A model generated the notes under the pieces. That model was not told the origin of the DNA, searched no databases, and saw only the letters and a list, made by a program, of their open reading frames with translations. Below, in pieces: positions 34,848-56,088 of a stretch of 64,000 nt of DNA. The stretch lies in IMG/VR virus record IMGVR_UViG_3300036766_000988, positions 124,001 to 188,000 of that record. One strand, given 5' to 3'. Each line of letters opens with the position of its first letter. Position 1 is the first letter of the stretch. The translations under genes and the position numbers were made by a program.

Positions 34848-35612
34848 TCAGACGGCGATGAACAGTTGATCGAGGCTGCGGATCTTGCCCACGAAGGCTT
34901 CCCACGCTCTCACGTAGGCGTCGTGTTGGGCCTCCACTTCTCGGTAGAGCCGTGTGAAGTCCTCGGTCTTTGCCTGAAGCACGCTCTCCGCTGTCACGAG
35001 ATCTTGCGTTCCCTTCCCGACAGAGGTGGCGATTCTTGTCAGATGCGCCGTGAACCACGTGTGGGCCTCTTCTTTACGAGTCATTCCATACTGGTCGTCC
35101 GCATCACATTCGAGAGCGAGGGTGTGTCGCTGGAGACCGTCGTAGGGGCGACCTTCGAATGAACGATCCCATCCCGCTATCTTCATGGGGTCGCCGCTTC
35201 TTTGGTTCTTTTCCGGCCTGGCTCCATCGAGGAAGGCTCGCAGGATGGCGGCTTCCCCGAGTATGTGCATCGCATCCACGCGGTTCTTGAGGTACAGGTA
35301 ATGTTGACCGCCACACTCCCCGTAGTTGGCCTGATGGTTGAAGCACGTGCGCCGAAGCTCGTTCCCCTTCTGCCACACCAGATGCAGATGCCCGTTGCCC
35401 TCCATCCCGCATCCTTGCCAGAAGTAGTTGATGTGCCCCCAAGGCTCCCCCCGAGCCTTTCGTGCCTCGACGTCCCAGATGGGCTCGTTGATGAGCTGTC
35501 GGAAGACCGATTGGGTCATCTGCTTCCGGCCGATCTGCACGGCGTGGATGGTCACCGAGACGGTCCTGACCCCCGCATCCCCCACCTGAACCGCATCCTC
35601 GACGTTCGGCAT
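34848..35612 (-). CDS. hypothetical protein
   Basis: 254 aa; GGTGTA motif 10 nt before the ATG. Confidence 0.65.
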   Translation of the reverse strand: MPNVEDAVQVGDAGVRTVSVTIHAVQIGRKQMTQSVFRQLINEPIWDVEARKARGEPWGHINYFWQGCGMEGNGHLHLVWQKGNELRRTCFNHQANYGECGGQHYLYLKNRVDAMHILGEAAILRAFLDGARPEKNQRSGDPMKIAGWDRSFEGRPYDGLQRHTLALECDADDQYGMTRKEEAHTWFTAHLTRIATSVGKGTQDLVTAESVLQAKTEDFTRLYREVEAQHDAYVRAWEAFVGKIRSLDQLFIAV

Positions 35613-36205
35613 GCCGTACAGTACACCGGGTCCGGAGGCCGTATAAAGAAAACAGCCGCCAGGGCGCTACAGCAGACGTAGCCGCCGAAGGAACCCGGAT
35701 CGGGTGCTTTTACGGCGTGGCCAGAGCCCCAAGCAGGTCTCGGTCGGCTTTGCACCTAAACCCGCCTGACGCCGCTGGTTTCGGTGGAGCCGCCCGCTCT
35801 ACACCGAAACCCAAATGACGCGCCCTCGGACGGGGCCTGAGAGCCGATCTAGACCGGGCCAGCCTCCGACCACCTGGGCCAACGGCCTTGGATTTCGAGC
35901 TGGACGATCCGGCGTAAGTGCGCGAGAATAGGCGCATCATGTCGTACGTTTCCCTCTCTGCGGCCCCGGTCTTCTGTACGCCCTGCCCTCCCTGTCTCGA
36001 CACTTTTTCCGCCCAGCATGACTGGCGACGGAACGTGAGCCGCATCGATGCGGGAGGTTCTCCGGCTCGTGTCCTTGGCTGGACGGCTGCGCTCTTGGCC
36101 GTCGCGGTCGTGGGCAAGAAGCTCCTCGACGGCTGAACCGCCATGGCCCCCCACCGCCGAGGCGGTTGACCCTTGGTGCCGGGACCGCCGGTGTAAGGAT
36201 CAACC

Positions 36206-36571
36206 ATGAGCGACTCGATGTCGAAGAAGGTGGCTGATCGCTTCCTGAAGGAGGCGATGGCAAACATGCGCACGAGGCGAACCGGGATCGATGGGGTCGT
36301 CATCTGGGTCTCCCCCGGGGAGTTCAGCGGCGCGGATAGTCAGCACGGCCCCCGAATCAAGGTGATGCTCGGGGACAAGGTCACGACGGAAGGGCTGGAA
36401 GAGGCAGTCTCGGTGCGGCTCACGAACCCACCCAAGGTGCTTGGAACCCTGCCTGCCAAGGTGGAGAAGCAGGTCGTGAAGTTCATCAACCAGAACCGCA
36501 ATGTTTTGCTCGGTCACTGGAATGGTGAAACGGACACCGAGGAGATGCTGAAGCTCATCGTGAGCATCTAG
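36206..36571 (+). CDS. DUF4160-like phage protein
   Basis: ANMRTRRTG..VIWVS...HGPRIKV...VVKFINQNRNVLLGHWNG; GGTGTA motif upstream. Confidence 0.45.
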   Translation: MSDSMSKKVADRFLKEAMANMRTRRTGIDGVVIWVSPGEFSGADSQHGPRIKVMLGDKVTTEGLEEAVSVRLTNPPKVLGTLPAKVEKQVVKFINQNRNVLLGHWNGETDTEEMLKLIVSI

Positions 36572-36694
36572 ATCGGGGGCAGTGCTGCTCCGCTACTGGA
36601 AGAACGAGATCAGCACCGGCGAGATGCTGGACGCGCTGGCGGCGGGCACGGAGCCGCCCCTGGCTGGATTTGAGCCGTCAAGTCCGCCTGGCCG

Positions 36695-37722
36695 CTAAGG
36701 TGTCGGAACGGGCAGGATCGCGAGCGGGTTGAGCACCAGGCCGGGAGACTGGAACTTGGCGTTCGTTGCGAAGACGTTGCTTGCGTGTGAAAGAACCCCG
36801 GTTCCCTTCGCTGCGTACCCAGCCCCCAGGGGGACGTTGAAGAAGCAGTAGATCAGAAGTCCCGTAGGGAACGGTGGGATGCCCGCCTGGATGATGCCGC
36901 TGTTCCCCGCCGTCCCCTGGGTGATCAAGACGTTGTCGAACTGGTAGGCGCCGCCCGAGGCCACGTTCACGACATCCGGCCCTCTCGCAACCAAGTTCAC
37001 GTTGAAGAACTTAGCGAGTCCGGCGGCGCCGATCTTCAGGCCACGGGCAGCCGCAGCGGCGGAGAGATCGCACGTGACCGCCTGGAGGGTGCCGCTCTCG
37101 ATGTCGTACGCAGTTCCTCCCGCAGCGAGGTTGCCGATGCAGTCCTGCAAGAAGAGCGTCGATCCTGCGTTCCCGTTGATCAGCACGTTTGGTGCGGTGT
37201 TCTCGGCCTTGGTTACGACGCAGTTCCGAACGTAGAGCTGACCGACGTTGGCGCCGAGAAGTTCTACGCAGGGCTTCCCGGCTGGGGCCTGGAGGTAGAG
37301 TCCCTCAACGTGAACTTGGTGAAACAACCCCACGGCGGGCGTGAACGAGATCTTGCCGTTGACGAGGATGCTGTACTCGTCGTTTCCCCAGATGCCTTGG
37401 ATGTGGACGCCCGCCGTCAGGATGATGTCCTCGTTCCAGCCGCCAGCTTTCGGGCTGATGAGGACGACAGCGGAGTTGCCGGAGTCCGTGTGCCCATCGG
37501 CTATTGCTTTTGCCTGAGCTGCGCCAATCGTCGCGAACGGTCCACCTGGGTACACGGGGTAGACAGCACCGGATAACGGGGGGGGGGGCCGCGCCCCCCC
37601 CCCCCCCCCGATTCCGCATCGATCTCATCTTCGACAGCGCGTAGAGCAGCGTCGAGATCTTCTCGGAGATCAGCTTTCCGAAGAAACTTGAAGAGCCGTC
37701 GGCTTCGCTGTTGGTAGCTCAT
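36695..37722 (-). CDS. putative virion appendage / beta-helix fibre protein, split by a frameshift in a G/C homopolymer tract
   Basis: ORFs 37501..37722 and 36695..37555 join at the tract; Gly/Ala/Asn-rich beta-helix-like body (FATIGAAQAKA.. start typical of tailspike-like proteins). Confidence 0.55.
37578..37609. repeat. G11-CCGCG-C16 homopolymer tract
   Basis: Read directly from the sequence. Confidence 0.95.
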
Positions 37723-37893
37723 CAGTCAACGCGATCTTAAAAACAAAAACGGCCCGTGAAGGCTAGGGTACCTACGTTCGCGGCTGCACCCGGCGACGTC
37801 GCCAGTAGGCACGTTCCCAAGCCCAGAAGATGGTGAAGCCGCCCGCGAGCGAGACCATGGTGGCGATGGCCATCAAGATCACGGGCGCCTCAG

Positions 37894-38445
37894 CTACTTC
37901 GGGCAGCAGTAGTTGTTGAAGCTCGGATCCGGCCCCGTTTGGGTGGAGACGTAATGGGCGTGAACGCAGCCTCGGGCGAGCGCCACCTGCTCGTTCTCGG
38001 CGTAGGTGCCGCCCGAGAACTCCAACCCCTTCGGCGGCTTCCCATCGGAGACGCACTTGTCGGACTCGTAGTCCAAGCGGGCGGGCAGGCTCGACGTGTG
38101 GACCTTGGCCTTCAGGACGGCGAGGACGGCTTCCTGCTGCACCGCCTCTGCCGCACGCCTCTCTGCGGCGGCCTTCGCCTTGGTGGCCTGCGCTTCCGCA
38201 TCGGCCCTGTCCTTCGCCGCGAGCTTCGTCTTCAAGCTGAGGAGCTTCTCGGCGGCGGCCTTGCCGCTCTTCGAGTTGGGGTCGAGCATCGTGGCTCCCT
38301 GACACGATTGAACCGCCAAGAGCCAATCTTCCTTCGCTTCCGCCGTCACGCACGCGTCGAACGAGGACTTCGCCTTGTCCTGGCAGCCCGACAGCAGAAC
38401 GAGCACCAGCACCGCGATCACCAAGACCCACGAGTTCTTCACCAT
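37894..38445 (-). CDS. putative lipoprotein
   Basis: MVKNSWVLVIAVLVLVLLSGC signal with LSGC lipobox; strong SD AAGGAGG upstream. Confidence 0.75.
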   Translation of the reverse strand: MVKNSWVLVIAVLVLVLLSGCQDKAKSSFDACVTAEAKEDWLLAVQSCQGATMLDPNSKSGKAAAEKLLSLKTKLAAKDRADAEAQATKAKAAAERRAAEAVQQEAVLAVLKAKVHTSSLPARLDYESDKCVSDGKPPKGLEFSGGTYAENEQVALARGCVHAHYVSTQTGPDPSFNNYCCPK

Positions 38446-38511
38446 CGGCCGAGCCTCCTTGGGTGACAACATATATGAAGGTAGACCCCCAAGGGAAGGG
38501 CCTGTGAACCC

Positions 38512-38781
38512 TTGGGGGTGCCCGAGCATCCCAACGCCTTCGCTGCGAAGATCACCCGCAAGCTCGTCGAGCTGCGGAAGGCCGAAGGGATCACCGTTCA
38601 CGAACTCGCCGAACGCCTCGACACCACCCCGCAAAATATCCAGCGGATCGAGCGCGGTCAGAACATCACCCTCAAGACCCTCGCCAGGATCGCGATGGGG
38701 ATCGGCATGCGGGTCGAGGTGTCGTTCGTACGTGACCCCAAGGGCCCGCGAGCCCCGCCACCAGGACGACCGAAGAAGTGA
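38512..38781 (+). CDS. XRE/Cro-family helix-turn-helix regulator
   Basis: LVELRKAEGITVHELAERLDTTPQNIQRIERGQNITLKTLARIA. Confidence 0.88.
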   Translation: MGVPEHPNAFAAKITRKLVELRKAEGITVHELAERLDTTPQNIQRIERGQNITLKTLARIAMGIGMRVEVSFVRDPKGPRAPPPGRPKK

Positions 38782-38950
38782 TCCCTCTACAGCTCTGACC
38801 TCGGGGTCTTCGCGGGGCCGCCGGGGAGCATCGGATCGCGGGGCAACCCTAGGGACGGTTCGAGCGCCGGACGATCTCGCCGTTCCGGGGATCGACTTCG
38901 GCGAAATACTCTCTCGATAAAATCCCTTCGTCAAAAACGGAGGGATCCCC

Positions 38951-39760
38951 TTGAGCGACAACCAGTACGCCCTCGCGTTCTACAAGCACAACTTCATTGG
39001 CGGGGACCTGGATCCCAACACTGCCCCTCCGGATCCCACCAGGATCTTGCGGACGCCGCACCTGGTGGAGACCTACGGGTACAGTGCGCTCCTGTCAGTG
39101 ATGGACGGGACAAGTCTCGTGGTCACCTGCTGGTTCAACGACCCGCTATCAGGCGTGTGGGTGCCGCTCACCAAGCCTTTGGTGGTGAATGCAGGCGAAC
39201 CCACCTATGTAGTCGTTCCAGCGGATGCCAACATCTTCACCCAGCTCGGGGCCAACGTTGGGGTGGTGACGAAGTTCGGAGTGGGCTGGATGGGGTTGGA
39301 TGCGGTCTCTTCGGAGATGATTGCGGCCCCCATCCCAGCAGGATCAGCAACGGCTGCGAATCAGACCAGCGAGATTGCCGACCTCGACATCATCAAGGCG
39401 CAGCTTGCTCCGAAGATTGCCTACCAGTCGGTGGCACTCGAAGCAGCGGCAGTCATCAAGGCAGGAGCTGGGACAGCGTTTACGGTGTTGGGCCGCGTGG
39501 ACTCCACTGCGGTGAGCGCAACGTACTACGTGCAGTTGGTCAACCGAACGGCGGCCGGAGCCGAAGGCGTCTATGCAGCAGGGGAGCTGCTCAGCGTCCT
39601 CAAGGTGATTCACATTCTCGGTACGGATGACGATTTCGACTTCAAGATCAGCATCGGCGGAATCGTGGCCAGTGTTGGGATCGTCTGCTTGATCTCTTCA
39701 ACCGAGTTCACCAAAACGATCTCAGGGGCTTCTCTGAACGTCTACGCGGAGCACTCATGA
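38951..39760 (+). CDS. hypothetical protein, probably virion-associated
   Basis: 269 aa beta-rich ORF coupled to the downstream tailspike-like gene. Confidence 0.55.
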   Translation: MSDNQYALAFYKHNFIGGDLDPNTAPPDPTRILRTPHLVETYGYSALLSVMDGTSLVVTCWFNDPLSGVWVPLTKPLVVNAGEPTYVVVPADANIFTQLGANVGVVTKFGVGWMGLDAVSSEMIAAPIPAGSATAANQTSEIADLDIIKAQLAPKIAYQSVALEAAAVIKAGAGTAFTVLGRVDSTAVSATYYVQLVNRTAAGAEGVYAAGELLSVLKVIHILGTDDDFDFKISIGGIVASVGIVCLISSTEFTKTISGASLNVYAEHS

Positions 39761-41772
39761 GCGCCGGACGAGGAGGGTATCCGGGTAGGGTCGGACAACA
39801 GCCGAATCAGGTGGTGGCGGCGGCGCTGTCTGCGGTCCCGTTTACCGGTACCGGCGCAGGCGATTGGGCGCGGCTCCACACAATGCTGGTCGCCAATGCG
39901 TACCACCGCCCTGTACTCCTGCTCGGGACGATCACGGCCGACTCGAAGGAATGGATCCCATCCGGCTCTACGATATTGCTCGCCAGCGGCACGATCATCA
40001 ATTCGACGCTGACCAATGCCGTCGACCCGCACGGGGGGACGGGTCACTGGGGGCCGTTCTACGCCGACGACACGGACCTTGGCGCTCGCACTCACGCCAC
40101 TACGCTGGCCGCCGCGTCGCGACCTGGATTCCCCGCACTGGTACTGACCAGCGGCACAGGATACACGGCCGGTGCAGAGATCATCGTCGATGATGCTGGA
40201 CAGCGCGAAGGTGCATACACTGTCGCGAGCGTCGCCGCTGCGTGGCAGGCAGGATATGCGTACGCAGCTTACAATCTCGTCACGAACGATACCGGCAAGG
40301 TCTACGCCTGCATCGTAGCCGGTACGAGCGCTGGCGCTGGAGGTCCCACGGGCACTAGCGCCCAGATCCAAGACAACACCGCGTGGTGGACGTATCTCGG
40401 GACAGGCGCGGGGATCAAACTCGACCGCGCAACGATCAAAACGTTTGCGAACGGCTCTGCCACGGGCGTGTCGGCCGGATTCCCGAAGGACATCTCGATC
40501 ATCGCGGACAAGGGGGCGATCCTTCAGGGTACAGGTCCGCGAGGTATTCAGATCGCCTACGGGCAAAACTGCCTAGTTCGCGGACTGCATATCAAGTCGA
40601 GTTTTGACGCGGCGGCCGGTTCGTTCGACTGGGGAGGGTTCGGCAATACATGGCAGGACATGGCCGTCGAGTACGTGGCGAACAACGGAGGCTGGGGGCT
40701 CGCGCTGGAGGACAACGAAAACGGCGCGTTCGTCCGATGCAACGTCAAGGGGTTCCAGGTCGGGATCCACTTCGAGGGTGCAGTCAACTCGGTCGCCGAC
40801 AATTGCAATGTGGAAGGCTCGACTCAGGCTGGATACTCAGCGAATGAAGATGCTGGAGATACCACCGAGGGCCCGCGTAACATCACGTTCACGGCATGCA
40901 CCGCGACGCGCTGTGGGGTTGGCAGCTACGGAGGTTTCGCATTCGGCATCGGCGCAAACTCGCCAGGGTCCGGCATTCGGCTCATCGGTTGCACGGCGAG
41001 CTACAACTACGTCGGACTCTATAGCTACCTAAGTGGGATCGAGATTGTCGGAGGCCTGTTCGAGAAATCGCAGCAGCAGGCGATGTTTTTTGCGGCGAAC
41101 ACGACCGGACACGTGCTCACGTCGGTGCGCACGACGGGCAACAACACGCAGGTGGCGGCCGGGACGCTGACCGCCACGACGATTTACCTTGGATCCAACG
41201 CCGAGCTCCGGGCCACTGACCTGACCGCGAGCGAGGTGGTCCCCGTGTTCTCATTGCAGAGCGAGACGGGCGTCACGCTGACGCTCGACAATCTTCGAAT
41301 CAATTCGACGTACAGTGGCGGCAATTACTACGGGATCAACGTCGTCGCGACGGGGAGCAAGATCCGCGTCAATGGCTACTCGTTTAACTCTGCTGGCGTC
41401 GGCGGTGTGTACCCGATCGTCGCGACCGCGGCTGCAACGATCTGGCTCAATGGTCTTCGGTCGACGGGATCCGCGCTGACTGGCGCTACGCACGGTGCGG
41501 CTGGGGTCGTGTTCGCATACGGCCCAGACATGAGCGAGGTCACGACTCACGGCAGCGGGCAGACGTACAACTTTGGCACCGTGGTAGCGGCAGGTACGGG
41601 CAACGCGCAGACCGTACCTGCGTCGTGCGCTGCGGGGGGTAGGCCGCCGACGTTTACGCGCACGGTGACCGGAGGGAGCGTGTTCAACCCGCCGATCGTG
41701 GTGATGGGCGCTGGATCATTTACCGCGCAATTCTCGGCGACCGACACCAGCACATACGCGTGGCGGCTGTGA
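39757..41772 (+). CDS. tailspike/tail-fibre-like protein with right-handed beta-helix (pectin-lyase-like) repeats
   Basis: Repeats such as NITFTACTATRCG and GIRLIGCTASYN; CBM-like module AWQAGYAY...KVYACIVAGTS...WWTYLG. Confidence 0.7.
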   Translation: MSAGRGGYPGRVGQQPNQVVAAALSAVPFTGTGAGDWARLHTMLVANAYHRPVLLLGTITADSKEWIPSGSTILLASGTIINSTLTNAVDPHGGTGHWGPFYADDTDLGARTHATTLAAASRPGFPALVLTSGTGYTAGAEIIVDDAGQREGAYTVASVAAAWQAGYAYAAYNLVTNDTGKVYACIVAGTSAGAGGPTGTSAQIQDNTAWWTYLGTGAGIKLDRATIKTFANGSATGVSAGFPKDISIIADKGAILQGTGPRGIQIAYGQNCLVRGLHIKSSFDAAAGSFDWGGFGNTWQDMAVEYVANNGGWGLALEDNENGAFVRCNVKGFQVGIHFEGAVNSVADNCNVEGSTQAGYSANEDAGDTTEGPRNITFTACTATRCGVGSYGGFAFGIGANSPGSGIRLIGCTASYNYVGLYSYLSGIEIVGGLFEKSQQQAMFFAANTTGHVLTSVRTTGNNTQVAAGTLTATTIYLGSNAELRATDLTASEVVPVFSLQSETGVTLTLDNLRINSTYSGGNYYGINVVATGSKIRVNGYSFNSAGVGGVYPIVATAAATIWLNGLRSTGSALTGATHGAAGVVFAYGPDMSEVTTHGSGQTYNFGTVVAAGTGNAQTVPASCAAGGRPPTFTRTVTGGSVFNPPIVVMGAGSFTAQFSATDTSTYAWRL

Positions 41773-41815: not shown

Positions 41816-42109
41816 TCATTTGGGCACTCCGTCGTCGGTCAACGACGCAGGGGCATGTCCGCAGTAGGGGCACGCTCCCACGGCCGGGAACCGTCCGGCG
41901 AGAAGGTCATCGAGCGACACGTTGACGAATCTCGACAGACGGAACGCGAGCAGCGGGGTGACCGTGCGGCCCTTCACGATGTTCGTGAGCGTCCTCGGCT
42001 GGAACCGCAGCGTCTCTGCGAGCGGGATCCAGCCGCCGAACCGCGTCCGAAGGAACCGCAAGGCGGCACGTACCCGCACTTGCTCTTCCCGCGTGAGATC
42101 AAGGTTCAT
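41816..42109 (-). CDS. XRE-like HTH protein with C-terminal CxxC
   Basis: ATG overlaps the transposase stop (TGATG); LAETLRFQPRTLTNIVKG...LSRFVNVSLDDLL; CPYC. Confidence 0.65.
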   Translation of the reverse strand: MNLDLTREEQVRVRAALRFLRTRFGGWIPLAETLRFQPRTLTNIVKGRTVTPLLAFRLSRFVNVSLDDLLAGRFPAVGACPYCGHAPASLTDDGVPK

Positions 42110-43356
42110 CACGAGCCTCCCGCCGCCATCAACGGCGGCTCGCCCCAGAACGACGCGTCGATCCCCAACTCGTAGATCGACTGCACCAGCACACGGATGT
42201 TGTGGCAGAGCACCTTCATGTAAATTTCGCTGACCTGCCCCTCGAAGGACTTCGCCCGTACCGAGGATCCGAGCACGCGCTTCACCGAACTGAACGTCGC
42301 CTCGGTCAAGCTGCGCTTGTGGTAGTGCTCCAAGAACGTCGGCCGGTTGTACGTGTAGAACGCGAACAAGCGGTTCCACAGGTCATCGTTGGCGCTCGCC
42401 TTCGAGTTCGACTTGAAGGGGACGAACGGCTCCGCGCCCGCCTTCACGATGGCCTTAAAGTTCTCCCGCGAAAGGTAGCCCATGTCGGCCGAGACCTCGC
42501 GCATCGCGAAGTTCTTCCCGGTCTGTTCGATGAGCCCAGGAAGGAACGGTGAGTCATGCGCGTTGCCTGGCGTGACCTCGGCGCCGGTGATGATCTGCGT
42601 CGTCACGCCGATCATCATGTGGAGCTTGAGCCACTTCTTCTCCCTACGATCCTTCCCCCACTTCTGATCGTGCCACCTGACGTAGCCCTTCGTGGCGATC
42701 CCGGTGCCATCGGCGGCGAAGTCCACCTCGACGGTGCGGAGCGGCTTTGCGCTTTCTTCGATCAGACGACGAAGCACCGGCACGGTCTCGGGCTCCCGCA
42801 TGATGCGGAAGACAGTGTTCGGATGCGGCACCACGTCGGTGAGGCCGCGCTCTTGACACGAACGGATGTCGCTCACGGCGCGGTCGCCGGAGAACAGCGT
42901 GAAGGTCTTGACCCCTGCGGCGAAGATCACGTCGGAAAGCGGGAGCGACGGGCGGCCGTTGCCCTTGTAGCAGGGCTGTTGGACGCCGTCGCAGAGCGCA
43001 CGGAGAAGCTTCTCGAAGATGTCCTTCTCGTTCATCCTCGCCTTGCGGTAGGCAGGCCAGTTCTGCGCGTACGTGATGCGCTTCTCTTCGGTCACGACGT
43101 TCCCGTCCGGCAACGTGATCTCACGGCGGACGATCAAGACCGCGTAGAGGTGCTTGCAGCGGTGCCCTGCCCCATGCTCTTCCGCGTCCGGGCACGAGCA
43201 GGTGCCCGCCACGGGATCCACGAAGTAGCTCCCCGAGTTCTTAGACTGCGAGGGAACGAGGTATTTGCCTTCGAGAACCTGCCGGATCTGCTTGCCCTTA
43301 CCTTGCACGATGGCGAGGCCGCGTTGCGCTCGGTAGTCGATGGCTGCGGTATCCAT
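42109..43356 (-). mobile_element. DDE transposase (IS4/IS5-like DDE_Tnp_1 type) with N-terminal SWIM zinc finger
   Basis: CSCPD..CKH; FAADGTG, KWLKLH, HDSPFL, VSADMGY, YHKRSLTEATFSSVKR. Confidence 0.88.
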
Positions 43357-43361
43357 GTGGA

Positions 43362-43429
43362 CTAATGTTGCCACAACGTAGCAACAGTCAAGACCCGCTT
43401 GACATGTTCCTACGTTGTGGCAACATTAG
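43362..43429. promoter_or_regulatory. 20 bp perfect inverted repeat around divergent promoters
   Basis: CTAATGTTGCCACAACGTAG (43362..43381) and its exact reverse complement (43410..43429); GTCAAG/CTTGAC between them. Confidence 0.85.
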
Positions 43430-47192: not shown

Positions 47193-48950
47193 ATGACCCA
47201 ATCCGCCCCGGATCGCCAAGCCCTCGTCTATGAGCAACTGAAGAGCATCCGCGTCTCGAAGACGTGTGCTCTCAAGCCGAGTCCACGGCTCAAACAGGAG
47301 ATCCGCGACCTATCCGGCACGCCGATCCAGTTTCGCCTACGCTACTACCAGGTGCAGGGGATCTACCATCTCTTGCTGATGAAGCGGATGGTGCTCGGGG
47401 ACGGTACCGGGCTCGGCAAGACCGTCGAGATGTTGGGGGCCCTTTGCTACCAGTGGCAAAAGGAGCCAACCAACAAGGTGTTGATCGTCGCCCCGAAGTC
47501 GGCTCTACGGCAGTGGGCTAGCGAGATCGACCGCTTCACGACCGACGTGAAGGTCTTCGTCGTTTCTGGCAAGCTCGATGAACGACGCGAGGTCTGGGAG
47601 GCCTGGGCAGCACACCCGGCGGACTCCGAAACCAAAGCTGTCCTGATCATCAACTACCACTTGCTCATTCGCGACTGGAACGAAGGGGCAGCCCTCCAGA
47701 AGGGAAAGGACGGCAAGCCTGATCCCAAGCTACCGATCATCCCCGGCATGGTCGACAAGATCACTCAGGGGATGAAGGACGTAGTGGTCGTCTACGACGA
47801 GGCTACAGCGTTCAAGAATACGCAGACCAAGACCTGGCAAGTCTGCCGGTTCCTCTCGGACCGGGCTCATCGCTGCTACGGCCTGACGGCGACGCTCCTC
47901 AAGAACAACCTGATGGAGGGCTTCGCGATCTACAAGGTGATCTGCCCGCCTGTCTTCGGGAACAAGACCTCCTTCCTCAAGGAGTACTGCGTCACCAAGA
48001 TGCAGCCTGTGGGGGGCGGTCGAAAGGTACCCATTGTCGTTGGGTATCGGAACCTACAGCACTTCAGGGACCGCATCGATCCGTACTTCCTGGGTCGAGC
48101 GAAGCATATCGTCTCCGATGAGCTACCGACGCTCATCACCAAAGAGATCATCTGCGAGCTGAGCGCCGCCGAGGACGCGAAGTACACGGAAGCTCTCTCG
48201 GGGGTGTTGGAACTCGGGGACGGTGAGGTCAGGGACTTCGAGGAGCACAAGGCATTCGTCAGCCTCATCTATTGCCAGCAGGTCTGCGATTCGATCTCGC
48301 TTTTGCGGTACCAAGATGGCGATGAGGTGCTGACCGGGATCTTCAAGGACGAGGGTCTCAAGGTCAAAGCCACCGGAGCGAAAGAGCAGCAGCTTCTCGA
48401 CATGTTGGCAGACGAACTCGATGGCGAGAAGACCATCATCTACACGCGGTTTGCGAGCCTTGTTCCCCGCCTCCAGAACATCCTCAAGGAGAACGGGATC
48501 AAGTCGGTCGCCATCACCGGCAAGGTGAAGGACACCGCCAAGGATCCCGCACGCCTCCGGGCACAGGAAGCATTCCAGGACATGAACTCCGATGTGAAGG
48601 TCATCTTCATCACGGACGCTGGCAGCGAGGCCATCAACCTACAGGCGGCCTCCGCGATGGTCTTCTACGACGCCCCTTGGTCGTGGGGAAACTACGTGCA
48701 GCTATTGGGGCGTCCTATTCGGATTGGGAGTCCTCATCAGCACGTCGTGGTCTACCATCTGGTGGCCGAGCGGCCCCGAGACAAGGCGAAGGATCGCAAG
48801 ACGATCGACCACCATGTGCTCGCCATGTTGGGCAAGAAGAAAGACCTTGTGGATAAGGTCTTGGGCGAAGCCGCTGTGGGGGCGCTCGATTTCGAGAAAG
48901 AGGGTTCCGGAACCAAGGAACTCGTACGGAAACTACAAGGCAAGGCATGA
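47193..48950 (+). CDS. SNF2/SWI2-family helicase
   Basis: LRYYQVQG, LGDGTGLGKT, VYDEATAFKN, GLTATLLKNN, AGSEAINLQAA, WSWGNYVQLLGR. Confidence 0.92.
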   Translation: MTQSAPDRQALVYEQLKSIRVSKTCALKPSPRLKQEIRDLSGTPIQFRLRYYQVQGIYHLLLMKRMVLGDGTGLGKTVEMLGALCYQWQKEPTNKVLIVAPKSALRQWASEIDRFTTDVKVFVVSGKLDERREVWEAWAAHPADSETKAVLIINYHLLIRDWNEGAALQKGKDGKPDPKLPIIPGMVDKITQGMKDVVVVYDEATAFKNTQTKTWQVCRFLSDRAHRCYGLTATLLKNNLMEGFAIYKVICPPVFGNKTSFLKEYCVTKMQPVGGGRKVPIVVGYRNLQHFRDRIDPYFLGRAKHIVSDELPTLITKEIICELSAAEDAKYTEALSGVLELGDGEVRDFEEHKAFVSLIYCQQVCDSISLLRYQDGDEVLTGIFKDEGLKVKATGAKEQQLLDMLADELDGEKTIIYTRFASLVPRLQNILKENGIKSVAITGKVKDTAKDPARLRAQEAFQDMNSDVKVIFITDAGSEAINLQAASAMVFYDAPWSWGNYVQLLGRPIRIGSPHQHVVVYHLVAERPRDKAKDRKTIDHHVLAMLGKKKDLVDKVLGEAAVGALDFEKEGSGTKELVRKLQGKA

Positions 48951-49527: not shown

Positions 49528-50403
49528 ATGGCCGAAGCCGAGAAGCCACCCTGCCCTCTTTGTGGGGGCGCCGAGGTCATTTACGTCAATGACTTCGATG
49601 TCGACACGTGCCGTTGTCTCAAGGCTCGGCTGATCAAGCAACATCTAGGATCCGAGATTGCATCGGCTCCCACGATTCTACGAAGCCCTGTGTTCGTCGT
49701 AAAAGACGACGAGGTACGGGTCGACCGCACCAAGGACAACCTCTTCATCAAGGCACCTTGGCAGGACGTGTTACCGCACCTCAAATGGGTGTTCTACTGC
49801 AAGGGGACGCGGTTCCGCTTTCGGATCGTGACCGACGAGAAGATCCGCACGGTCTTCGTAGGGAACGAGAGCTACAGGGCCCGCTCGAAGAGCACCCGAG
49901 ATGACGTCACGACGTTCAATTCTCTTGGGGATCTAGTGGGCTCGGACTTCGACCTCATCATCATCCGGCTAGGGCTCTTGGGACACAAGAACGTGGCCGC
50001 CCCTGGGGCCTTGAAGGAAGCCCTCATGCTCCGTGAGGTCGCATGTCTACCGACCTGGATTGTCGAACAGCCCAACAACCCATTCGGTCCTGGATGCCAT
50101 ACGTACTCTGAGGATGTGGCGGACTACATCGAGCGTCTTTTCGAGGTCGTCAATCTCACCCGAAAAGATCGTCCTGCCCCTGTTCCTCGTCCCCCGGAGA
50201 CCGATGCGGATGAGGTCACGGGGAACGAAGACCCCGCTGCGATGGAATCCCCTGTGGCGGCCGAACCTGTCGAATCCCATTTCGAGACCCCTCCGAGCGC
50301 GATTGACGATGACATGATGTCTCAGCTTGTGGGCAGTGGCGGCAAGAAAAAGTACTCGGGGTCGAGCTGGAAAAAGAAGTCCGGCGGAGGGGGCCCAGTA
50401 TGA
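49528..50403 (+). CDS. DnaC/IstB-like helicase loader (degenerate ATPase) - tentative
   Basis: N-terminal CPLCGG...CRC Zn motif, DLIIIRLG Walker-B-like strand, coupled to dnaB; no Walker A seen. Confidence 0.4.
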   Translation: MAEAEKPPCPLCGGAEVIYVNDFDVDTCRCLKARLIKQHLGSEIASAPTILRSPVFVVKDDEVRVDRTKDNLFIKAPWQDVLPHLKWVFYCKGTRFRFRIVTDEKIRTVFVGNESYRARSKSTRDDVTTFNSLGDLVGSDFDLIIIRLGLLGHKNVAAPGALKEALMLREVACLPTWIVEQPNNPFGPGCHTYSEDVADYIERLFEVVNLTRKDRPAPVPRPPETDADEVTGNEDPAAMESPVAAEPVESHFETPPSAIDDDMMSQLVGSGGKKKYSGSSWKKKSGGGGPV

Positions 50404-51878
50404 AGCGCCTTCTTCGTTCGATCCTCGACTTCGGCGGGATCTCTCAGGAGAACCTCGTTCAGAACTTCCAGAAGCTCTTGGGCGCCCATATCGACTGGAC
50501 GCAGCCTCCGGATCAGAAGATCTACGAATACACGCTCTCGTATTTCCAGCAGCGTTTGGAAATGCCGTCCGGTCAGACGGTGCTCGACTACTACATGACC
50601 GTCGGGGAGTCCGGAGACATCGAGGTCATCGAGCGTCTCAAGGACATCGGGGCGGCTCCTGCGTACATCCGAACGAACTACGTTCAGCTTCTGACCAACC
50701 TGCTCGAAGAGCAGAGCAAAGCGAAGGCAGTCGCTCTCATCAAGGAGACACACGAGATCGTGACTCGTGGTCTCGACGTGCTCGACGGTCGGGAGAAGGT
50801 TCGTCGACAAGGCGTTCGAGATGGGCTCTTGCATTTCGCAGGACGTGCTCACGACCTTCTCTTGCCTGAGTCCAACGCTCGTACGGCCGGGGACATCCGT
50901 CTCGACGGCACTTCCGTGTGGAAGGAGTACGAGCAAGCCAAGATCAACAAGGACAAGGTCTGGGGCAAGTTCACAGGCATCAACGAGATCGACAAGATCT
51001 GTCACGGAATCAAGAAGGGCGAGCTATGGGTACACGCCGCCTTCCCAGGTGAGCTGAAGACCACATTCGCCCTTAATTGGTGCTACAACCTCGTCACCCG
51101 CTACAAGTCGAATGTCCTCTACTTCTCGATGGAGATGCCTTACGAGCAGCTTCGGTTGCAGACGTACGTCATTCACAGCGCCAACGCGAAATGGAAGCAG
51201 TATGGGTACAAGCCTCTCGACTACCGCAAGGTGCGTGACGGTGAGCTGACGCCCGCCGAGGAGGCCTTCTACCAGAAGGTCATCGAGGACTTCTGCACCA
51301 ACCCCGACTACTGTCACTTCGAGATTCGTGCGCCGGATCGAGACTTCACGATTGACGACATCCGGCTCGAAGCCGAGCTGACCCACAAGCAACTCGAAGT
51401 CGGATTGGTTGTTGTGGACCACGGGCAGTTGGTCGAGGCTCGCAAGACGAAGCGGTCGAAGGACTACGTCATCGAGCTGAACTCGGTGGTCCGCGACATG
51501 AAGAAGTTCGCTCTGCACTTCAACCATGGGGAGAAGATCCCTGTCCTAATGCTCTTCCAGATCAACCGTCAGGGGAAGGAAGACGCAGCGAAAAACGAAG
51601 GCCGCTACAAGGCCAGTGCGCTCGCGTACGCCAACGAAGTCGAGAAGTCGGCCGACACGATCACCACATCATATCTCGATGACGACCACCGGCGGAACGG
51701 GACGTCTCTCTTCTGCAACCTCAAGAACAGAGACAATCCGATCTTCGATCCCTTCATGTGCCGGGTCGAGTTTCAATGTCGCCGGATCTACAACCTCAAC
51801 GCGCTCGATGCCCCAATCGGCCGTGGTATGGGGGTCGAGGAACACCAGAGCGTTCTGGATGCGATGGCGAATCTCTAG
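50400..51878 (+). CDS. dnaB: replicative DnaB-like helicase
   Basis: FTGINEIDKICHGIKKGEL, AFPGELKTT, YFSMEM, VVVDHGQL, FQINRQG, EKSADTI. Confidence 0.85.
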   Translation: MKRLLRSILDFGGISQENLVQNFQKLLGAHIDWTQPPDQKIYEYTLSYFQQRLEMPSGQTVLDYYMTVGESGDIEVIERLKDIGAAPAYIRTNYVQLLTNLLEEQSKAKAVALIKETHEIVTRGLDVLDGREKVRRQGVRDGLLHFAGRAHDLLLPESNARTAGDIRLDGTSVWKEYEQAKINKDKVWGKFTGINEIDKICHGIKKGELWVHAAFPGELKTTFALNWCYNLVTRYKSNVLYFSMEMPYEQLRLQTYVIHSANAKWKQYGYKPLDYRKVRDGELTPAEEAFYQKVIEDFCTNPDYCHFEIRAPDRDFTIDDIRLEAELTHKQLEVGLVVVDHGQLVEARKTKRSKDYVIELNSVVRDMKKFALHFNHGEKIPVLMLFQINRQGKEDAAKNEGRYKASALAYANEVEKSADTITTSYLDDDHRRNGTSLFCNLKNRDNPIFDPFMCRVEFQCRRIYNLNALDAPIGRGMGVEEHQSVLDAMANL

Positions 51879-52779: not shown

Positions 52780-53231
52780 AGCTCTCCACCCGAGAGATGG
52801 GCAATGTTGAGTTGCAGCTCATCTACCAGGTGGGGGAGCTGTGGGAGCCAACGTGGAGGCCTTTACAGGGGTCGACTTTCGCGGCCATTCTGCCGGTGGT
52901 CTCTGACGAGACGATGAACCATGCGCTCCGGGGATGGACGAAGCCTCTCGTGTCGTCGCTCGGGCTGCCTCCCCAGGGCTCTCTACGGAAGCTGCCCAAG
53001 GAGTACCAGCAGTGTGAGCACCGGAATCACTGTCCGTTTTATGCGCCGCACAACTGTGTCCCGATCGCTAAGAAATTGCAGGACTGTTTTCAGCCGGAAA
53101 ACCTAGCAGGAGACGACGCTCGAACTCTTGCCTACGATGCCATTCGGCTTTGGCGAGAAGGGGTGTATATCGTGGTCGTCCAGGAGGCTTCTGATGCCCA
53201 TCGATCCTACCCAAGATCCGACCGAACTTGA
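52764..53231 (+). CDS. hypothetical protein with Cys/His cluster
   Basis: CEHRNHCPFY..NC...DC; overlaps neighbours in the replication operon. Confidence 0.55.
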   Translation: MPRRLKLSTREMGNVELQLIYQVGELWEPTWRPLQGSTFAAILPVVSDETMNHALRGWTKPLVSSLGLPPQGSLRKLPKEYQQCEHRNHCPFYAPHNCVPIAKKLQDCFQPENLAGDDARTLAYDAIRLWREGVYIVVVQEASDAHRSYPRSDRT

Positions 53232-56088
53232 TGAAGATGGTCTAAACGAAGTCTTCGACCTGATGCACGAGAACAGGGACGTGGCGAAGCCTGTGCCCAA
53301 TCTTGATGCTGACGACGATGACGGAACCTCAGCGACTGACTTCCTCGACAACAACGTCTTGCAGGAGCGCGAAGTTCCTGACATCACGAAGCCGTGGATG
53401 AAGCACCACAACTTCGTCCTCGTCCGGACCCTCGAAGAGGTCAACGGCATCGTGGATGCAGCTCTGGCGAACGGGCATTGCTCGCTCGACCTAGAGTGTG
53501 AGGGACTCGACAACCGTATCTTCTACACGGAGATGCCGCCGGATATCGATCCGGTGAGTGGTGTCGAACGAAAGGTGCATGGCAAGCCCTATACGAAGCA
53601 CAAGGTCGTAGGCTTTTGCCTGGCGGTCGGAGACGCCAAGACCGGTTACTACATCCCAATCCGGCACACTCCGCTCGATGGAGGGGTCGATCTCAATGTC
53701 AAGCCTGTCGAGGAGGTCGAGGCGGCTATCAAGCGTCTATGCTTGGCGGCGCAGCCTATCCCTAAACCTGGGGTGAAAGATCCTCTCGCCTTTCGGGAGT
53801 TCGAGAAACCGCCGCAGGTCATCATCGATTTCTGGCACTCGGCGTTCGATCAGGAGTTCCTATTCCCCATCACGGGTATCGACTTCTGGCATCCGGATGG
53901 CTTCGAAGACGGCAACCTGGCAGCCTTCGTGAAGTACTCAGGAGACCGAAATCTCGGGCTCAAGGCGAAGTCCGCTGAGATGCTCCGTGACCCGGATGGG
54001 CACCCCTACGAAATGATCGAGCTGAAAGAACTCTTCCCCCATCGTGGGAGCAAGATCGAGTTCCATCTTCTGGCGCCGGATGAACCCGGCGTCATCAAGT
54101 ACGGCTGCTCGGACGGCATCTGCACGCGGCTCATCTGCGCCCATAAGGATCTCGTCCCGCTGGTGAAGGAGAAGTACAACTTCACGTACCGTCTCGAAAA
54201 GCAGGTCGCTCAGGTGAAGCGGGCGATGGAGCGGCACCGGGTCAAGATCAACCGAACCCGCATCATCGAGCTGCGAGCCCAGCACGAGAAAGCTCGGGAT
54301 GAGATTCGAGCGAAGATCCAGGAGTTCGCTCAGTCGAAGGGGTTCAACAGCTTCGAGCCAGGCTCGCCGAAGCAGCTCTCCGACATGCTCTTCGGAAAAG
54401 ATCCTGGGCTCGACATCACGCTCCCAGGACGCGGCCCTGACGATGCGGACTTCCCCAACGGGAAGCCCCCGATGAACGAGAAGTCGAAGCAGTACAAGAC
54501 GGGCGCCGACGTTCTCGACGAGATGGCGAAGATCATGGGGGACAATGCGCCCCCGATTCTCAAGTGGATCGTTGCCTTCCGTGAGGAAGACAAGATGCTG
54601 GGCACGTACCTCGATAGCCTGGCCAACCATCCGGATGCGGGGACCGACGAGCTTCGGTTCCAGTTCAAGCAGACCGGGGCCGCCACCGGTCGTTTCTCAG
54701 CTCCGGCAGGGGACAACGCCCATGGATACTCGGGCGTTCCGATCCACGGAATCCCGGCGACGTCGGACATCCGGACGTGCTTCGTGGCCCGCGAGGGCTA
54801 CACGATGGTCAAGTGCGACTACTCGGGTGAAGAGCTGCGCATCGTCACCAACCTCTCCAACGAGCGGGTGTGGATCAAGGAGTTCCATGAAGGAACTGGT
54901 GATCTTCACAGCATCACGGCCCGAGCGTTCTTCGGCAAGCAAGAGGTCTCGAAGGACGAGCGCAAGATGGGCAAGATTGCCAACTTCGCGCTCGTCTACG
55001 GTGGGGGTCCCGCAGCCGTCATGCGTGCCACCGGGTGCGACCGTATGGAAGGTCAGCGCCGGAAGCAGGCCTTCGATAAGGCCGTGCCTGACTTCGCCAA
55101 ATGGGTGAAGGTTCAACACGCAAAGGTGAAGAAAGAGTTGGGGGTCTGGACGGCATTCGGTCGTTGGATTCAGATCCCCGATGCGTGCTCTCCGGATAAC
55201 GCGATCAAGGCTGCCTGCGAGCGTCACGCGACCAACTACCCGATTCAGGGTTCGGGCGCGGACATCATGAAGATCGCGATGGTTCTCGTCCACAAGGAGA
55301 TGTGGCGCCGTGGGTGGCTACAGGACGACTCCGTTCGGTTGCTCTTGACGGTACACGACGAGTTGGTCTTCGAGATCAAGCACGCCAGGGTGGTGGAAGC
55401 TGTGCCGCTCATCGTCGAGCAAATGGAGCTGCCGACCATGATGGCTCGACCTCCCTACTCCCCTCAGTGGCAGGTGCCGCTGGTGACCGAGCCGCTGGTG
55501 GGCCCTACGTGGGGGACCGGCTATCCGTGTGAGCGAGCGACGGAGGCCCACAAGCTCAAGGAGGGCGAGGTCGTCGTCAACGGTTTCGTCTACGGCGCGA
55601 TCCGAACCGTCGATCTGGGCAAGGAGATTCCAGGGGTAGGGGAAGTCGAGCATCACCGCGACGAGAAGAACAAGAAGGTCAAGATCCGCATCCTCGAACC
55701 GCAGTGGCTCGTGGGGGTCTCGGACATGAAGTTTGAGCCTGCGCCCCCTCCTAAGAAGGACGAGTCCGGTGGCGGTGGGGGAGGAAGCAACGGAGCTGGG
55801 GGTCCTGGTGAGCCCCAGCGAGCTTCGGCCACCGAGTCCACCAAGAACGGGGCGTCCAAGACAGCTACGTTGAAGTTGAAGCTGCTCACGAAGCAGTCGG
55901 TACAGCAGGTTCGAGGTCTGTGTATGGAGTGGATCGATCCCGACCATGGGGTTCTGCTCAAGCTCATCGATCCGGTGAGCGGACAGATCCTCATCGACCC
56001 CAAGCACGGGGTGCGGATCAACGCCGAGAAGTTCAGGCAGGCGATGTTCGAGAAGAACCTCAGCGACGGGAAAATGGTCGTTTCTTAG
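53194..56088 (+). CDS. polA: family A DNA polymerase with 3'-5' exonuclease
   Basis: ExoI DLECEGL, ExoII AFDQEF, ExoIII YGCSD; motif A DYSGEELR, motif B ERKMGKIANFALVYG, motif C VHDELVF. Confidence 0.95.
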   Translation: MPIDPTQDPTELDEDGLNEVFDLMHENRDVAKPVPNLDADDDDGTSATDFLDNNVLQEREVPDITKPWMKHHNFVLVRTLEEVNGIVDAALANGHCSLDLECEGLDNRIFYTEMPPDIDPVSGVERKVHGKPYTKHKVVGFCLAVGDAKTGYYIPIRHTPLDGGVDLNVKPVEEVEAAIKRLCLAAQPIPKPGVKDPLAFREFEKPPQVIIDFWHSAFDQEFLFPITGIDFWHPDGFEDGNLAAFVKYSGDRNLGLKAKSAEMLRDPDGHPYEMIELKELFPHRGSKIEFHLLAPDEPGVIKYGCSDGICTRLICAHKDLVPLVKEKYNFTYRLEKQVAQVKRAMERHRVKINRTRIIELRAQHEKARDEIRAKIQEFAQSKGFNSFEPGSPKQLSDMLFGKDPGLDITLPGRGPDDADFPNGKPPMNEKSKQYKTGADVLDEMAKIMGDNAPPILKWIVAFREEDKMLGTYLDSLANHPDAGTDELRFQFKQTGAATGRFSAPAGDNAHGYSGVPIHGIPATSDIRTCFVAREGYTMVKCDYSGEELRIVTNLSNERVWIKEFHEGTGDLHSITARAFFGKQEVSKDERKMGKIANFALVYGGGPAAVMRATGCDRMEGQRRKQAFDKAVPDFAKWVKVQHAKVKKELGVWTAFGRWIQIPDACSPDNAIKAACERHATNYPIQGSGADIMKIAMVLVHKEMWRRGWLQDDSVRLLLTVHDELVFEIKHARVVEAVPLIVEQMELPTMMARPPYSPQWQVPLVTEPLVGPTWGTGYPCERATEAHKLKEGEVVVNGFVYGAIRTVDLGKEIPGVGEVEHHRDEKNKKVKIRILEPQWLVGVSDMKFEPAPPPKKDESGGGGGGSNGAGGPGEPQRASATESTKNGASKTATLKLKLLTKQSVQQVRGLCMEWIDPDHGVLLKLIDPVSGQILIDPKHGVRINAEKFRQAMFEKNLSDGKMVVS

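What the first reader, a model, noticed from the sequence alone, without database searches (positions are those of the whole stretch)
36695..37722. G11/C16 tract frameshifts a fibre-like gene: possible phase variation of a receptor-binding appendage
Seen: the N-terminal ORF (MSYQQRSRRLFKFLRKADLREDLDAALRAVEDEIDAES...) enters G16-CGCGG-C11 on the coding strand and leaves out of frame with the 286 aa beta-helix-like body (LSGAVYPVYPGGPFATIG...). Adding 1 or removing 2 nt restores one ~340 aa protein with a Gly/Pro linker. The two tracts can also pair as a hairpin. Established: homopolymer slippage drives ON/OFF phase variation. Caveat: long homopolymers are also classic sequencing/assembly errors.
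Basis: partly seen in the sequence, partly recalled or inferred. Interest (0 to 1): 0.6.

Follow-up and report, generated by a model that had tools for sequence, protein, structure and literature searches.

The report
Poly-G/poly-C block splitting a phage gene
A 32-base run of G's then C's breaks the frame of a tailspike-like gene in a huge sediment phage, but it most likely comes from sequencing or assembly junk, so it is not good evidence for a phase-variation switch.

Summary
On the + strand, G11 (37578-37588), CCGCG and C16 (37594-37609) separate a 38-codon ATG-started frame from a 293-codon body on the - strand. A block of 33 or 30 nt would be in frame; the record has 32. No other homopolymer in the 252-kb virus record exceeds 7 nt.

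The body is a confident right-handed beta-helix (pLDDT 92.6; Z 20-25 to phage tailspikes and polysaccharide lyases). Relatives carry variable short N-terminal modules and Gly-rich linkers, so "one fibre-like gene" is plausible.

The block itself is poorly supported:
- An independent assembly of the one public run that holds this DNA stops at 37575 and restarts 3 nt before 37594. Nothing bridges the gap.
- About 900 unrelated junk G/C contigs of that run pile onto the 32 nt (depth about 14,870 against 9).
- The same kind of G-run/C-run block sits mostly at contig ends across IMG/VR.
- Six related contigs have ordinary mixed codons at this point.
- Leaving the block out gives one open 331-codon frame.

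Best reading: an intact gene mis-rendered at a GC-rich spot (about 0.72). A real hypermutable tract is not excluded (about 0.2). Only raw reads or an amplicon can settle it.

The parts
37578..37609 (.). G11-CCGCG-C16 block (+ strand), which reads G16-CGCGG-C11 on the coding strand. It is 32 nt long and self-complementary.
   Evidence: Searches show the sequence, its uniqueness in 252 kb and the inverted repeat. One search shows that no contig of the independent assembly bridges it and that about 900 junk contigs pile on it.
37610..37722 (-). N-terminal piece: the ATG at 37722 plus 37 codons of unique sequence, ending ..DAES at the block.
   Evidence: GC3 is 0.50, against 0.72 on average for the first 38 codons of 191 likely genes; only 2.6% of those are as low. 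It has no significant similarity to relatives' N-termini and no second copy in the record.
36695..37577 (-). Beta-helix body (293 codons from LSG-AVYPVY.. plus the TAG stop). It has no start codon of its own before the conserved first strand.
   Evidence: 64 relatives; pLDDT 92.6; Z 20-25 to tailspikes and lyases; pectinesterase, E 6.5e-6. Homology with relatives ends at 37564-37576, directly beside the block.
37501..37722 (-). The 73-aa ORF as it reads in the record. It runs in frame 1 through the block and then out of frame over the start of the body.
37894..38445 (-). Upstream neighbour on the same strand: a 183-aa predicted lipoprotein (context only).
   Evidence: One search shows the signal peptide with Cys. 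One search gives the gene call on the independent contig. One search gives a weak PHROG hit to superinfection exclusion (E 0.005).

Best explanation
The block is most likely not the true sequence of the phage. The N-terminal piece (37610-37722) and the beta-helix body (36695-37577) are probably one intact gene of about 330-345 codons. It would encode a small tailspike-like protein with a short N-terminal module. In the source data, the stretch between 37577 and 37610 was not read cleanly. Reads coming from either side ran into G calls, which gives G's after the left flank and C's before the right flank on the + strand. Alternatively, abundant G/C junk k-mers were used to close a small gap at a GC-rich Gly/Pro linker. 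Either way the original assembler joined the two flanks through that junk. On this reading the length of 32, and with it the frameshift, is arbitrary. Shown: the block is unsupported by a second assembly, it resembles abundant junk in the same run, and the flanks are in register with each other. Inferred: the cause (dark-cycle poly-G or junk bridging) and the true sequence in between.
For: (1) Logan's independent assembly of the only public run holding this DNA has a 4,302-nt contig ending at 37575 and a 17,178-nt contig starting 3 nt before 37594. The depths are similar (9.0 and 9.6). Those first 3 letters do not match the record's GCG, and no contig spans both flanks.
(2) The 134-nt bin that holds the block has a summed depth of about 14,870, against 9 elsewhere. 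About 900 contigs match the 32 nt at 90% or more. Their loose ends continue as more G's or more C's, not as the window's flanks. One is a 554-nt contig that lies on nothing else in the 4-kb stretch.
(3) The orientation, G's after the left flank and C's before the right flank, is what 3' poly-G read tails from both strands produce. Poly-G tails are a documented artefact of two-colour Illumina chemistry (fastp paper).
(4) In IMG/VR, G10-N5-C10 occurs in 62 stretches of DNA, and in 46 of them it lies within 200 nt of a locus end. For C10-N5-G10 the figure is 30 of 39. One junk block at a contig start contains the same G-run-CCGCG-C-run string.
(5) No other homopolymer in the 252 kb exceeds 7 nt.
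(6) Relatives have mixed codons at the homologous point: P0002, P0003 on four contigs, L106 and P0004.
(7) Leaving out the whole block gives one open 331-codon frame with the junction ..AES|LSG-AVYPVY. Relatives have ..SELSP-AVYPVY there.
(8) Both sides of the block have the same tetranucleotide signature (r 0.98, as high as within a side), so this is one genome and not a cross-genome chimera.
Against: Only contigs could be laid, not raw reads, and the run may be the source of the record. The evidence is therefore an independent assembler on the same data, not independent data. The instrument model is not on record, so two-colour chemistry is assumed. A real G16/C11 hairpin would also break a k=31 assembly at 9x coverage. 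The independent right-hand contig does carry C16 directly before the unique flank, so a long C-run next to that flank is the main state in the reads and not a rare chimera. That rules out simple abutment of the flanks. Gly-rich linkers, and Gly-then-Pro runs, occur naturally at this place in relatives. A real G/C-rich coding stretch here is therefore plausible. A few G10-loop-C10 hairpins in IMG/VR look genuine: one is identical in two assemblies and one is followed by T8.
Confidence: 0.72

Rival explanations
1. The block is real and is a hypermutable contingency tract inside the linker of the gene. Replication slippage in G16 or C11 would switch the gene between an in-frame form (33 or 30 nt) and out-of-frame forms, and the record has captured an OFF length of 32. 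Slippage by RNA polymerase or a -1 ribosomal slip on the G-run would also give some full-length protein from an OFF template.
For: The frame arithmetic fits: +1 or -2 nt gives one frame, and the frame change needed equals a -1 shift. The block sits where relatives have a Gly-rich linker, and it would encode Gly5..Pro4. The independent contig carries C16 next to the right flank and differs from the record just beside it, which could reflect length heterogeneity. Hypermutable poly-G tracts in phage receptor-binding genes are reported for Campylobacter phages (Sorensen et al. 2021, Cell Rep 35:109214, seen in the reference list). Contingency loci are also reported in T-even phages (bioRxiv 10.1101/2025.10.21.683753).
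Against: No contig links the block to both flanks. No relative has a tract. Two complementary runs forming a -44 kcal/mol hairpin inside a coding region are unlike known contingency loci, which use one run. It is the only long run in 252 kb. The sequence is indistinguishable from junk that is abundant in the same run and in the database.
Confidence: 0.18
2. The junction is a misjoin of two places of the same genome that are not neighbours. The 38-codon frame would then be the start of a different gene, and the true 5' end of the beta-helix gene would lie elsewhere, in unassembled sequence.
For: The N-terminal piece has an atypical GC3 of 0.50. It has no similarity to any relative's N-terminus. 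Homology with relatives stops exactly at the block. Junk G/C blocks do join or end contigs elsewhere in IMG/VR. The record is judged only 53% complete.
Against: Both flanks code on the same strand and in the same direction. The ATG-started piece has the size of a relative's N-terminal module. The flanks are in register, and the joined junction resembles the relatives' junction. Depths on the two sides are nearly equal and composition is identical.
Confidence: 0.07
3. The block is a real structural hairpin, such as a terminator or other regulatory stem, between two separate genes.
For: G10-loop-C10 hairpins that look genuine exist in other viral contigs (L029 is followed by T8, and L035 and L041 are identical).
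Against: No T-run follows the stem on either strand, and no terminator was called there. The body has no start codon between the block and its conserved first beta-strand AVYPV, so it cannot be translated as a separate gene.
Confidence: 0.03

Closest known systems
Poly-G read tails of two-colour Illumina chemistry (NextSeq/NovaSeq) and the G/C junk they leave in assemblies
   Same: Pure G-run on the 3' side of one flank and a C-run (the poly-G of the other strand) before the other flank. G/C k-mers are very abundant in the same run. The graph breaks at the site. The same block type lies at contig ends across IMG/VR.
   Different: Here the block is internal to a 252-kb contig, not at an end. 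The instrument model of the run is not on record, so the chemistry is assumed.
Hypermutable poly-G tracts in receptor-binding protein genes of Campylobacter phages (Sorensen et al. 2021, Cell Rep 35:109214) and phage contingency loci (Gomez, Barrick and Waters 2025, bioRxiv 10.1101/2025.10.21.683753)
   Same: A homopolymer inside a phage gene whose length decides the reading frame. The protein has the beta-helix fold of receptor-binding tailspikes.
   Different: Those tracts are single runs whose variable length was shown in reads from cultured phages (my recollection of those papers, not read here). Here there are two complementary runs, no read-level data, no support from a second assembly and no tract in relatives.
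Right-handed beta-helix tailspikes and depolymerases (Sf6 tailspike, CBA120 TSP2, Acinetobacter phage Fri1 gp49, Klebsiella K2-2 TSP) and polysaccharide lyases or pectinesterases
   Same: Same fold over 250-260 residues: Z 20-25, rmsd about 3 A. The profile matches the pectinesterase N-terminal motif (1xg2, E 6.5e-6). In a relative, the N-terminal module is shared with neighbouring collagen-like fibres.
   Different: It is much smaller (about 290-residue helix), with no Pfam or PHROG match and 8-14% identity to solved structures. Catalytic residues and trimer formation were not examined. The gene here is not in a structural gene cluster.
Programmed -1 ribosomal frameshifting and transcriptional slippage
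   Same: The frame change needed equals -1. A run of G's could act as a slippery site or as a slippage-prone template.
   Different: The stimulatory stem would be formed by the slippery run itself, not lie 5-9 nt downstream. Known slippage runs are mostly A or T (from general knowledge, not tested here).

Membership tests
Phase-variable contingency locus (homopolymer slippage) | A long homopolymer or simple repeat within the coding region | tested here: met
   G16 and C11 lie on the coding strand in the record. This is met for the record only.
Phase-variable contingency locus (homopolymer slippage) | Alternative tract lengths switch the frame ON and OFF | tested here: met
   32 nt is out of frame, and 33, 30 or 0 nt give one frame.
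Phase-variable contingency locus (homopolymer slippage) | The tract exists in the DNA and varies in length within the population | tested here: not met
   Only contigs were available. No contig spans the block, and the two long contigs end at its edges. A length distribution could not be measured.
Phase-variable contingency locus (homopolymer slippage) | The tract, or its position, recurs in related genes or strains | tested here: not met
   P0002, P0003 (four contigs), L106 and P0004 have mixed Gly/Ser/Pro codons there.
Poly-G / G-C junk assembly artefact | G-run follows the left flank and C-run precedes the right flank | tested here: met
Poly-G / G-C junk assembly artefact | The source run holds abundant G/C junk matching the block, joined to other sequence | tested here: met
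   Depth is about 14,870 against 9. About 900 contigs match, and their loose ends are more G's or C's. One is a 554-nt contig that lies on nothing else in the 4-kb stretch.
Poly-G / G-C junk assembly artefact | An independent assembly does not reproduce the join | tested here: met
   Contigs end at 37575 and start 3 nt before 37594, and those first letters disagree with the record.
Poly-G / G-C junk assembly artefact | The run was made on a two-colour instrument, with base qualities collapsing in the runs | not testable with these tools
Phage tailspike / fibre with right-handed beta-helix | Right-handed parallel beta-helix fold | tested here: met
   pLDDT 92.6 and pTM 0.90. Z 20-25 over about 255 residues to tailspikes and lyases. 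BFVD best E 3.5e-10.
Phage tailspike / fibre with right-handed beta-helix | N-terminal virion-attachment module shared with other fibres of the same phage | tested here: inconclusive
   This is met in relative L106, where three adjacent genes share a module of about 35 aa. No second copy of the N-terminal piece was found in this record, but the record is judged only 53% complete.
Phage tailspike / fibre with right-handed beta-helix | Location among structural or tail genes | tested here: not met
   The neighbours are a lipoprotein, an HTH protein, an IS transposase, another beta-helix protein, and then SNF2, DnaB and PolA.
Phage tailspike / fibre with right-handed beta-helix | Trimer formation and glycan binding or cleavage | not tested
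   This needs a complex prediction or biochemistry.
Canonical -1 programmed ribosomal frameshift site | Slippery heptamer followed 5-9 nt downstream by a separate stem or pseudoknot | tested here: not met
   The G-run could be slippery, but the only stem is formed by that run itself with C11.

The most novel reading that the evidence does not exclude
The double tract is real. A huge sediment phage would then carry a contingency switch in the linker of a small beta-helix fibre gene, built from two complementary homopolymers (G16 and C11) that also form a very stable hairpin. Slippage at either run, in replication, transcription or translation, would set how much full-length appendage is made.
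Probability: 0.18. Interest if true: 0.55.

Novelty: not a real feature. Interest (0 to 1): 0.15.

Why it matters
If the block were real, it would extend phage contingency loci, so far shown in cultured Campylobacter and T-even phages, to an uncultured huge phage, in an unusual two-run hairpin form. As it stands, the value is practical. The case shows how G/C junk inside a metagenomic viral contig can imitate a frameshifted, phase-variable gene. It also gives simple warning signs: the only long homopolymer in the genome, G's then C's, a break in a second assembly, a pile-up of junk depth, and flanks that are in register. The gene itself adds a compact member to a family of small viral beta-helix proteins that has no Pfam or PHROG model.

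Tried and rejected
- Pfam and PHROG scans of both ORFs found nothing.
- The word-index protein search found only one relative. The exhaustive search was therefore used and found 64.
- A protein-based search of viral contigs for related loci found none.
- Exact searches for each flank in viral contigs, and for the left flank in metagenome contigs, found no second assembly of this phage.
- A degenerate pattern for the conserved AVYPV..GGP motif in metagenome contigs found one relative, L106.
- Neighbours of the relatives (L002, L004, L008) have no counterparts in this record, so synteny could not test the join.
- The N-terminal piece has no similarity to relatives' N-termini (BLASTP nothing; shuffle test p 0.47). 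It also has no paralogue in the record.
- The neighbouring 671-aa beta-helix protein is not related to the body family.
- A cross-genome chimera is rejected, because composition is the same on both sides.
- A terminator is rejected, because there is no T-run.
- TAG recoding was considered because a tRNA with anticodon CUA exists elsewhere in the record. It is rejected for this gene, because its TAG stop falls where the 62%-identical relative also ends. No other genetic code was used.
- DNA of the independent contigs could not be fetched because the sample file is too large, so the three disagreeing letters are unknown.

Full report
**What is in the record.**
The window is bases 124,001-188,000 of a 252,183-nt linear IMG/VR virus record, judged 53% complete. 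On the + strand, G11 occupies 37578-37588, CCGCG follows, and C16 occupies 37594-37609. On the - strand an ATG at 37722 opens a frame that runs 38 codons to the block. It passes through the block as Gly5-Arg-Gly-Pro3 and ends out of frame at a TAG at 37501-37503. The frame two bases further on is open from inside the block to the TAG at 36695-36697. A block of 33 or 30 nt would give a single frame; the record has 32. The runs pair into a hairpin, about -44 kcal/mol in a 71-nt context. No other homopolymer in the whole record exceeds 7 nt, and the chance expectation for such a pair is about 1e-8.

**What the gene is.**
- The body has no Pfam or PHROG match.
- An exhaustive profile-free search found 64 relatives. 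The closest are P0002 (62% identity) and P0003 (51%).
- With 28 of them aligned, AlphaFold2 gives a right-handed beta-helix at pLDDT 92.6.
- Structural alignment gives Z 20-25 over about 255 residues to phage tailspikes (Fri1 gp49, CBA120 TSP2, Sf6, K2-2 TSP) and to alginate or pectate lyases.
- The best viral models match at E 3.5e-10. The family profile touches pectinesterase 1xg2 at E 6.5e-6.
- Relatives carry N-terminal extensions of about 11 to 200 residues before a conserved first strand, AVYPV-like.
- In one relative's contig (L106), three adjacent genes share the same N-terminal module of about 35 aa followed by a Gly-rich linker. Two continue as collagen-like fibres and one as the small beta-helix.

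This is the modular layout of phage fibres, so "fibre-like" is reasonable by fold and by relatives. In this record, however, the neighbours are not structural genes. They are a lipoprotein, an HTH protein, a 269-aa and a 671-aa beta-helix protein, an IS transposase, and then SNF2, DnaB and PolA.

**Is it one gene?**
The body cannot start on its own. Its conserved first strand lies upstream of the first possible start codon (GTG at 37555), and there is no start between the block and that strand. Homology with relatives ends at 37564-37576, directly beside the block. Leaving out the whole block yields one open 331-codon frame with the junction ..AES|LSG-AVYPVY. The closest long relatives have ..SELSP-AVYPVY after a Gly-rich linker. 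Both sides of the block have the same tetranucleotide signature and nearly the same depth.

Two results argue against a single gene. The 38-codon piece has GC3 of 0.50, which only 2.6% of gene starts in this genome reach. It also resembles no relative's N-terminus and no other gene of the record. I judge one gene the likelier reading and a misjoin within the genome a minor rival.

**Is the block real?**
Only one public run holds this DNA, a sediment metagenome that may be the source of the record. It is served as Logan contigs, not reads. Laid on 35200-39200, those contigs show five things:
- A 4,302-nt contig ends at 37575.
- A 17,178-nt contig begins 3 nt before 37594, and its first three letters do not match the record.
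- No contig reaches both flanks.
- About 900 other contigs match the 32 nt at 90% or more. They lift the summed depth of that bin to about 14,870, against 9 elsewhere.
- The loose ends of those contigs continue as more G's or more C's, never as the window's flanks.

G/C junk of exactly this kind is therefore abundant in the run, and a second assembler did not make the join. The orientation, G's after the left flank and C's before the right flank, is what poly-G tails on reads of both strands would give. Such tails are a known artefact of two-colour Illumina chemistry.

In IMG/VR, G10-N5-C10 occurs in 62 stretches of DNA, and in 46 of them it lies within 200 nt of a locus end. For C10-N5-G10 the figure is 30 of 39. 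One terminal junk block contains the same G-run-CCGCG-C-run string. Relatives encode the homologous linker with ordinary mixed codons.

**What keeps the real-tract reading alive.**
- A true G16/C11 hairpin would also break a short-read assembly at 9x coverage.
- The independent right-hand contig does carry C16 directly before the unique flank. A long C-run there is therefore the main state in the data and not a rare chimera, and simple abutment of the flanks is unlikely.
- Gly-then-Pro runs occur naturally in this family.
- A few G10-loop-C10 hairpins in other viral contigs look genuine.
- The instrument model is unknown.

Poly-G contingency tracts in phage receptor-binding genes are on record (for the reference; for T-even phages). 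The idea is therefore legitimate, though not new in kind.

**Verdict.**
The most likely explanation (about 0.72) is an intact tailspike-like gene whose GC-rich linker region was mis-rendered by junk G/C sequence, so that the frameshift is an artefact. A real hypermutable double tract has about 0.18, a within-genome misjoin about 0.07, and a regulatory hairpin between two genes about 0.03. Raw reads of the run or an amplicon across 37,450-37,750 would decide the matter. Interest is low unless the tract is confirmed.

**Limits.**
No raw reads were available. The independent assembly uses the same run.

Noticed in passing
whole record outside the window: G000 C1 about 62,800-88,500 and 36,908-36,981: ARAGORN finds 54 tRNA genes and one tmRNA on the minus strand, almost all in one cluster. 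It also finds a lone tRNA with anticodon CUA, labelled Pyl. This is a very large tRNA set, as in huge phages.
   Followed up: partly
window 36695-36697: The beta-helix gene stops at a TAG exactly where its 62%-identical relative also ends. TAG therefore acts as a stop here despite the CUA-anticodon tRNA elsewhere in the record.
   Followed up: partly
window 42109-43374 (-): An IS-type transposase (DDE_Tnp_1, E 1e-22, plus a SWIM zinc finger) sits inside the phage genome, between the beta-helix genes and the replication genes.
   Followed up: no
window 38951-39760 (+) and 39757-41772 (+): A 269-aa protein of unknown family overlaps the start of a 671-aa protein with a Pfam Beta_helix domain. 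The pair is transcribed divergently from the gene studied, and the 671-aa protein is unrelated to its family by profile comparison.
   Followed up: partly
window 47193-48950, 50400-51878, 53128-56088 (+): A replication module: an SNF2-type helicase, a DnaB-like helicase and a family A DNA polymerase.
   Followed up: no
L106 338-2770, 2953-3981, 3994-6630 (+): Three adjacent genes of a related phage share one N-terminal module of about 35 aa followed by a Gly-rich linker. Two continue as long collagen-like Gly-Pro-X repeats and one as the small beta-helix. This looks like a set of fibres on a common anchor.
   Followed up: partly
L077, L078, L080, L099 (IMG/VR contigs): C-run/G-run blocks recur every 0.4-1.2 kb within single contigs and are flanked by the same short motif. 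They look like concatenated tailed fragments, a second kind of library or assembly artefact in viral contigs.
   Followed up: no
L035 8209-8239, L041 3-32, L029 4164-4189: Some G10-loop-C10 hairpins in viral contigs look genuine. One is identical in two separate assemblies, and one is followed by T8 like an intrinsic terminator.
   Followed up: no
window 37894-38445 (-): A predicted lipoprotein lies just upstream on the same strand, with a weak PHROG hit to superinfection exclusion (E 0.005).
   Followed up: no
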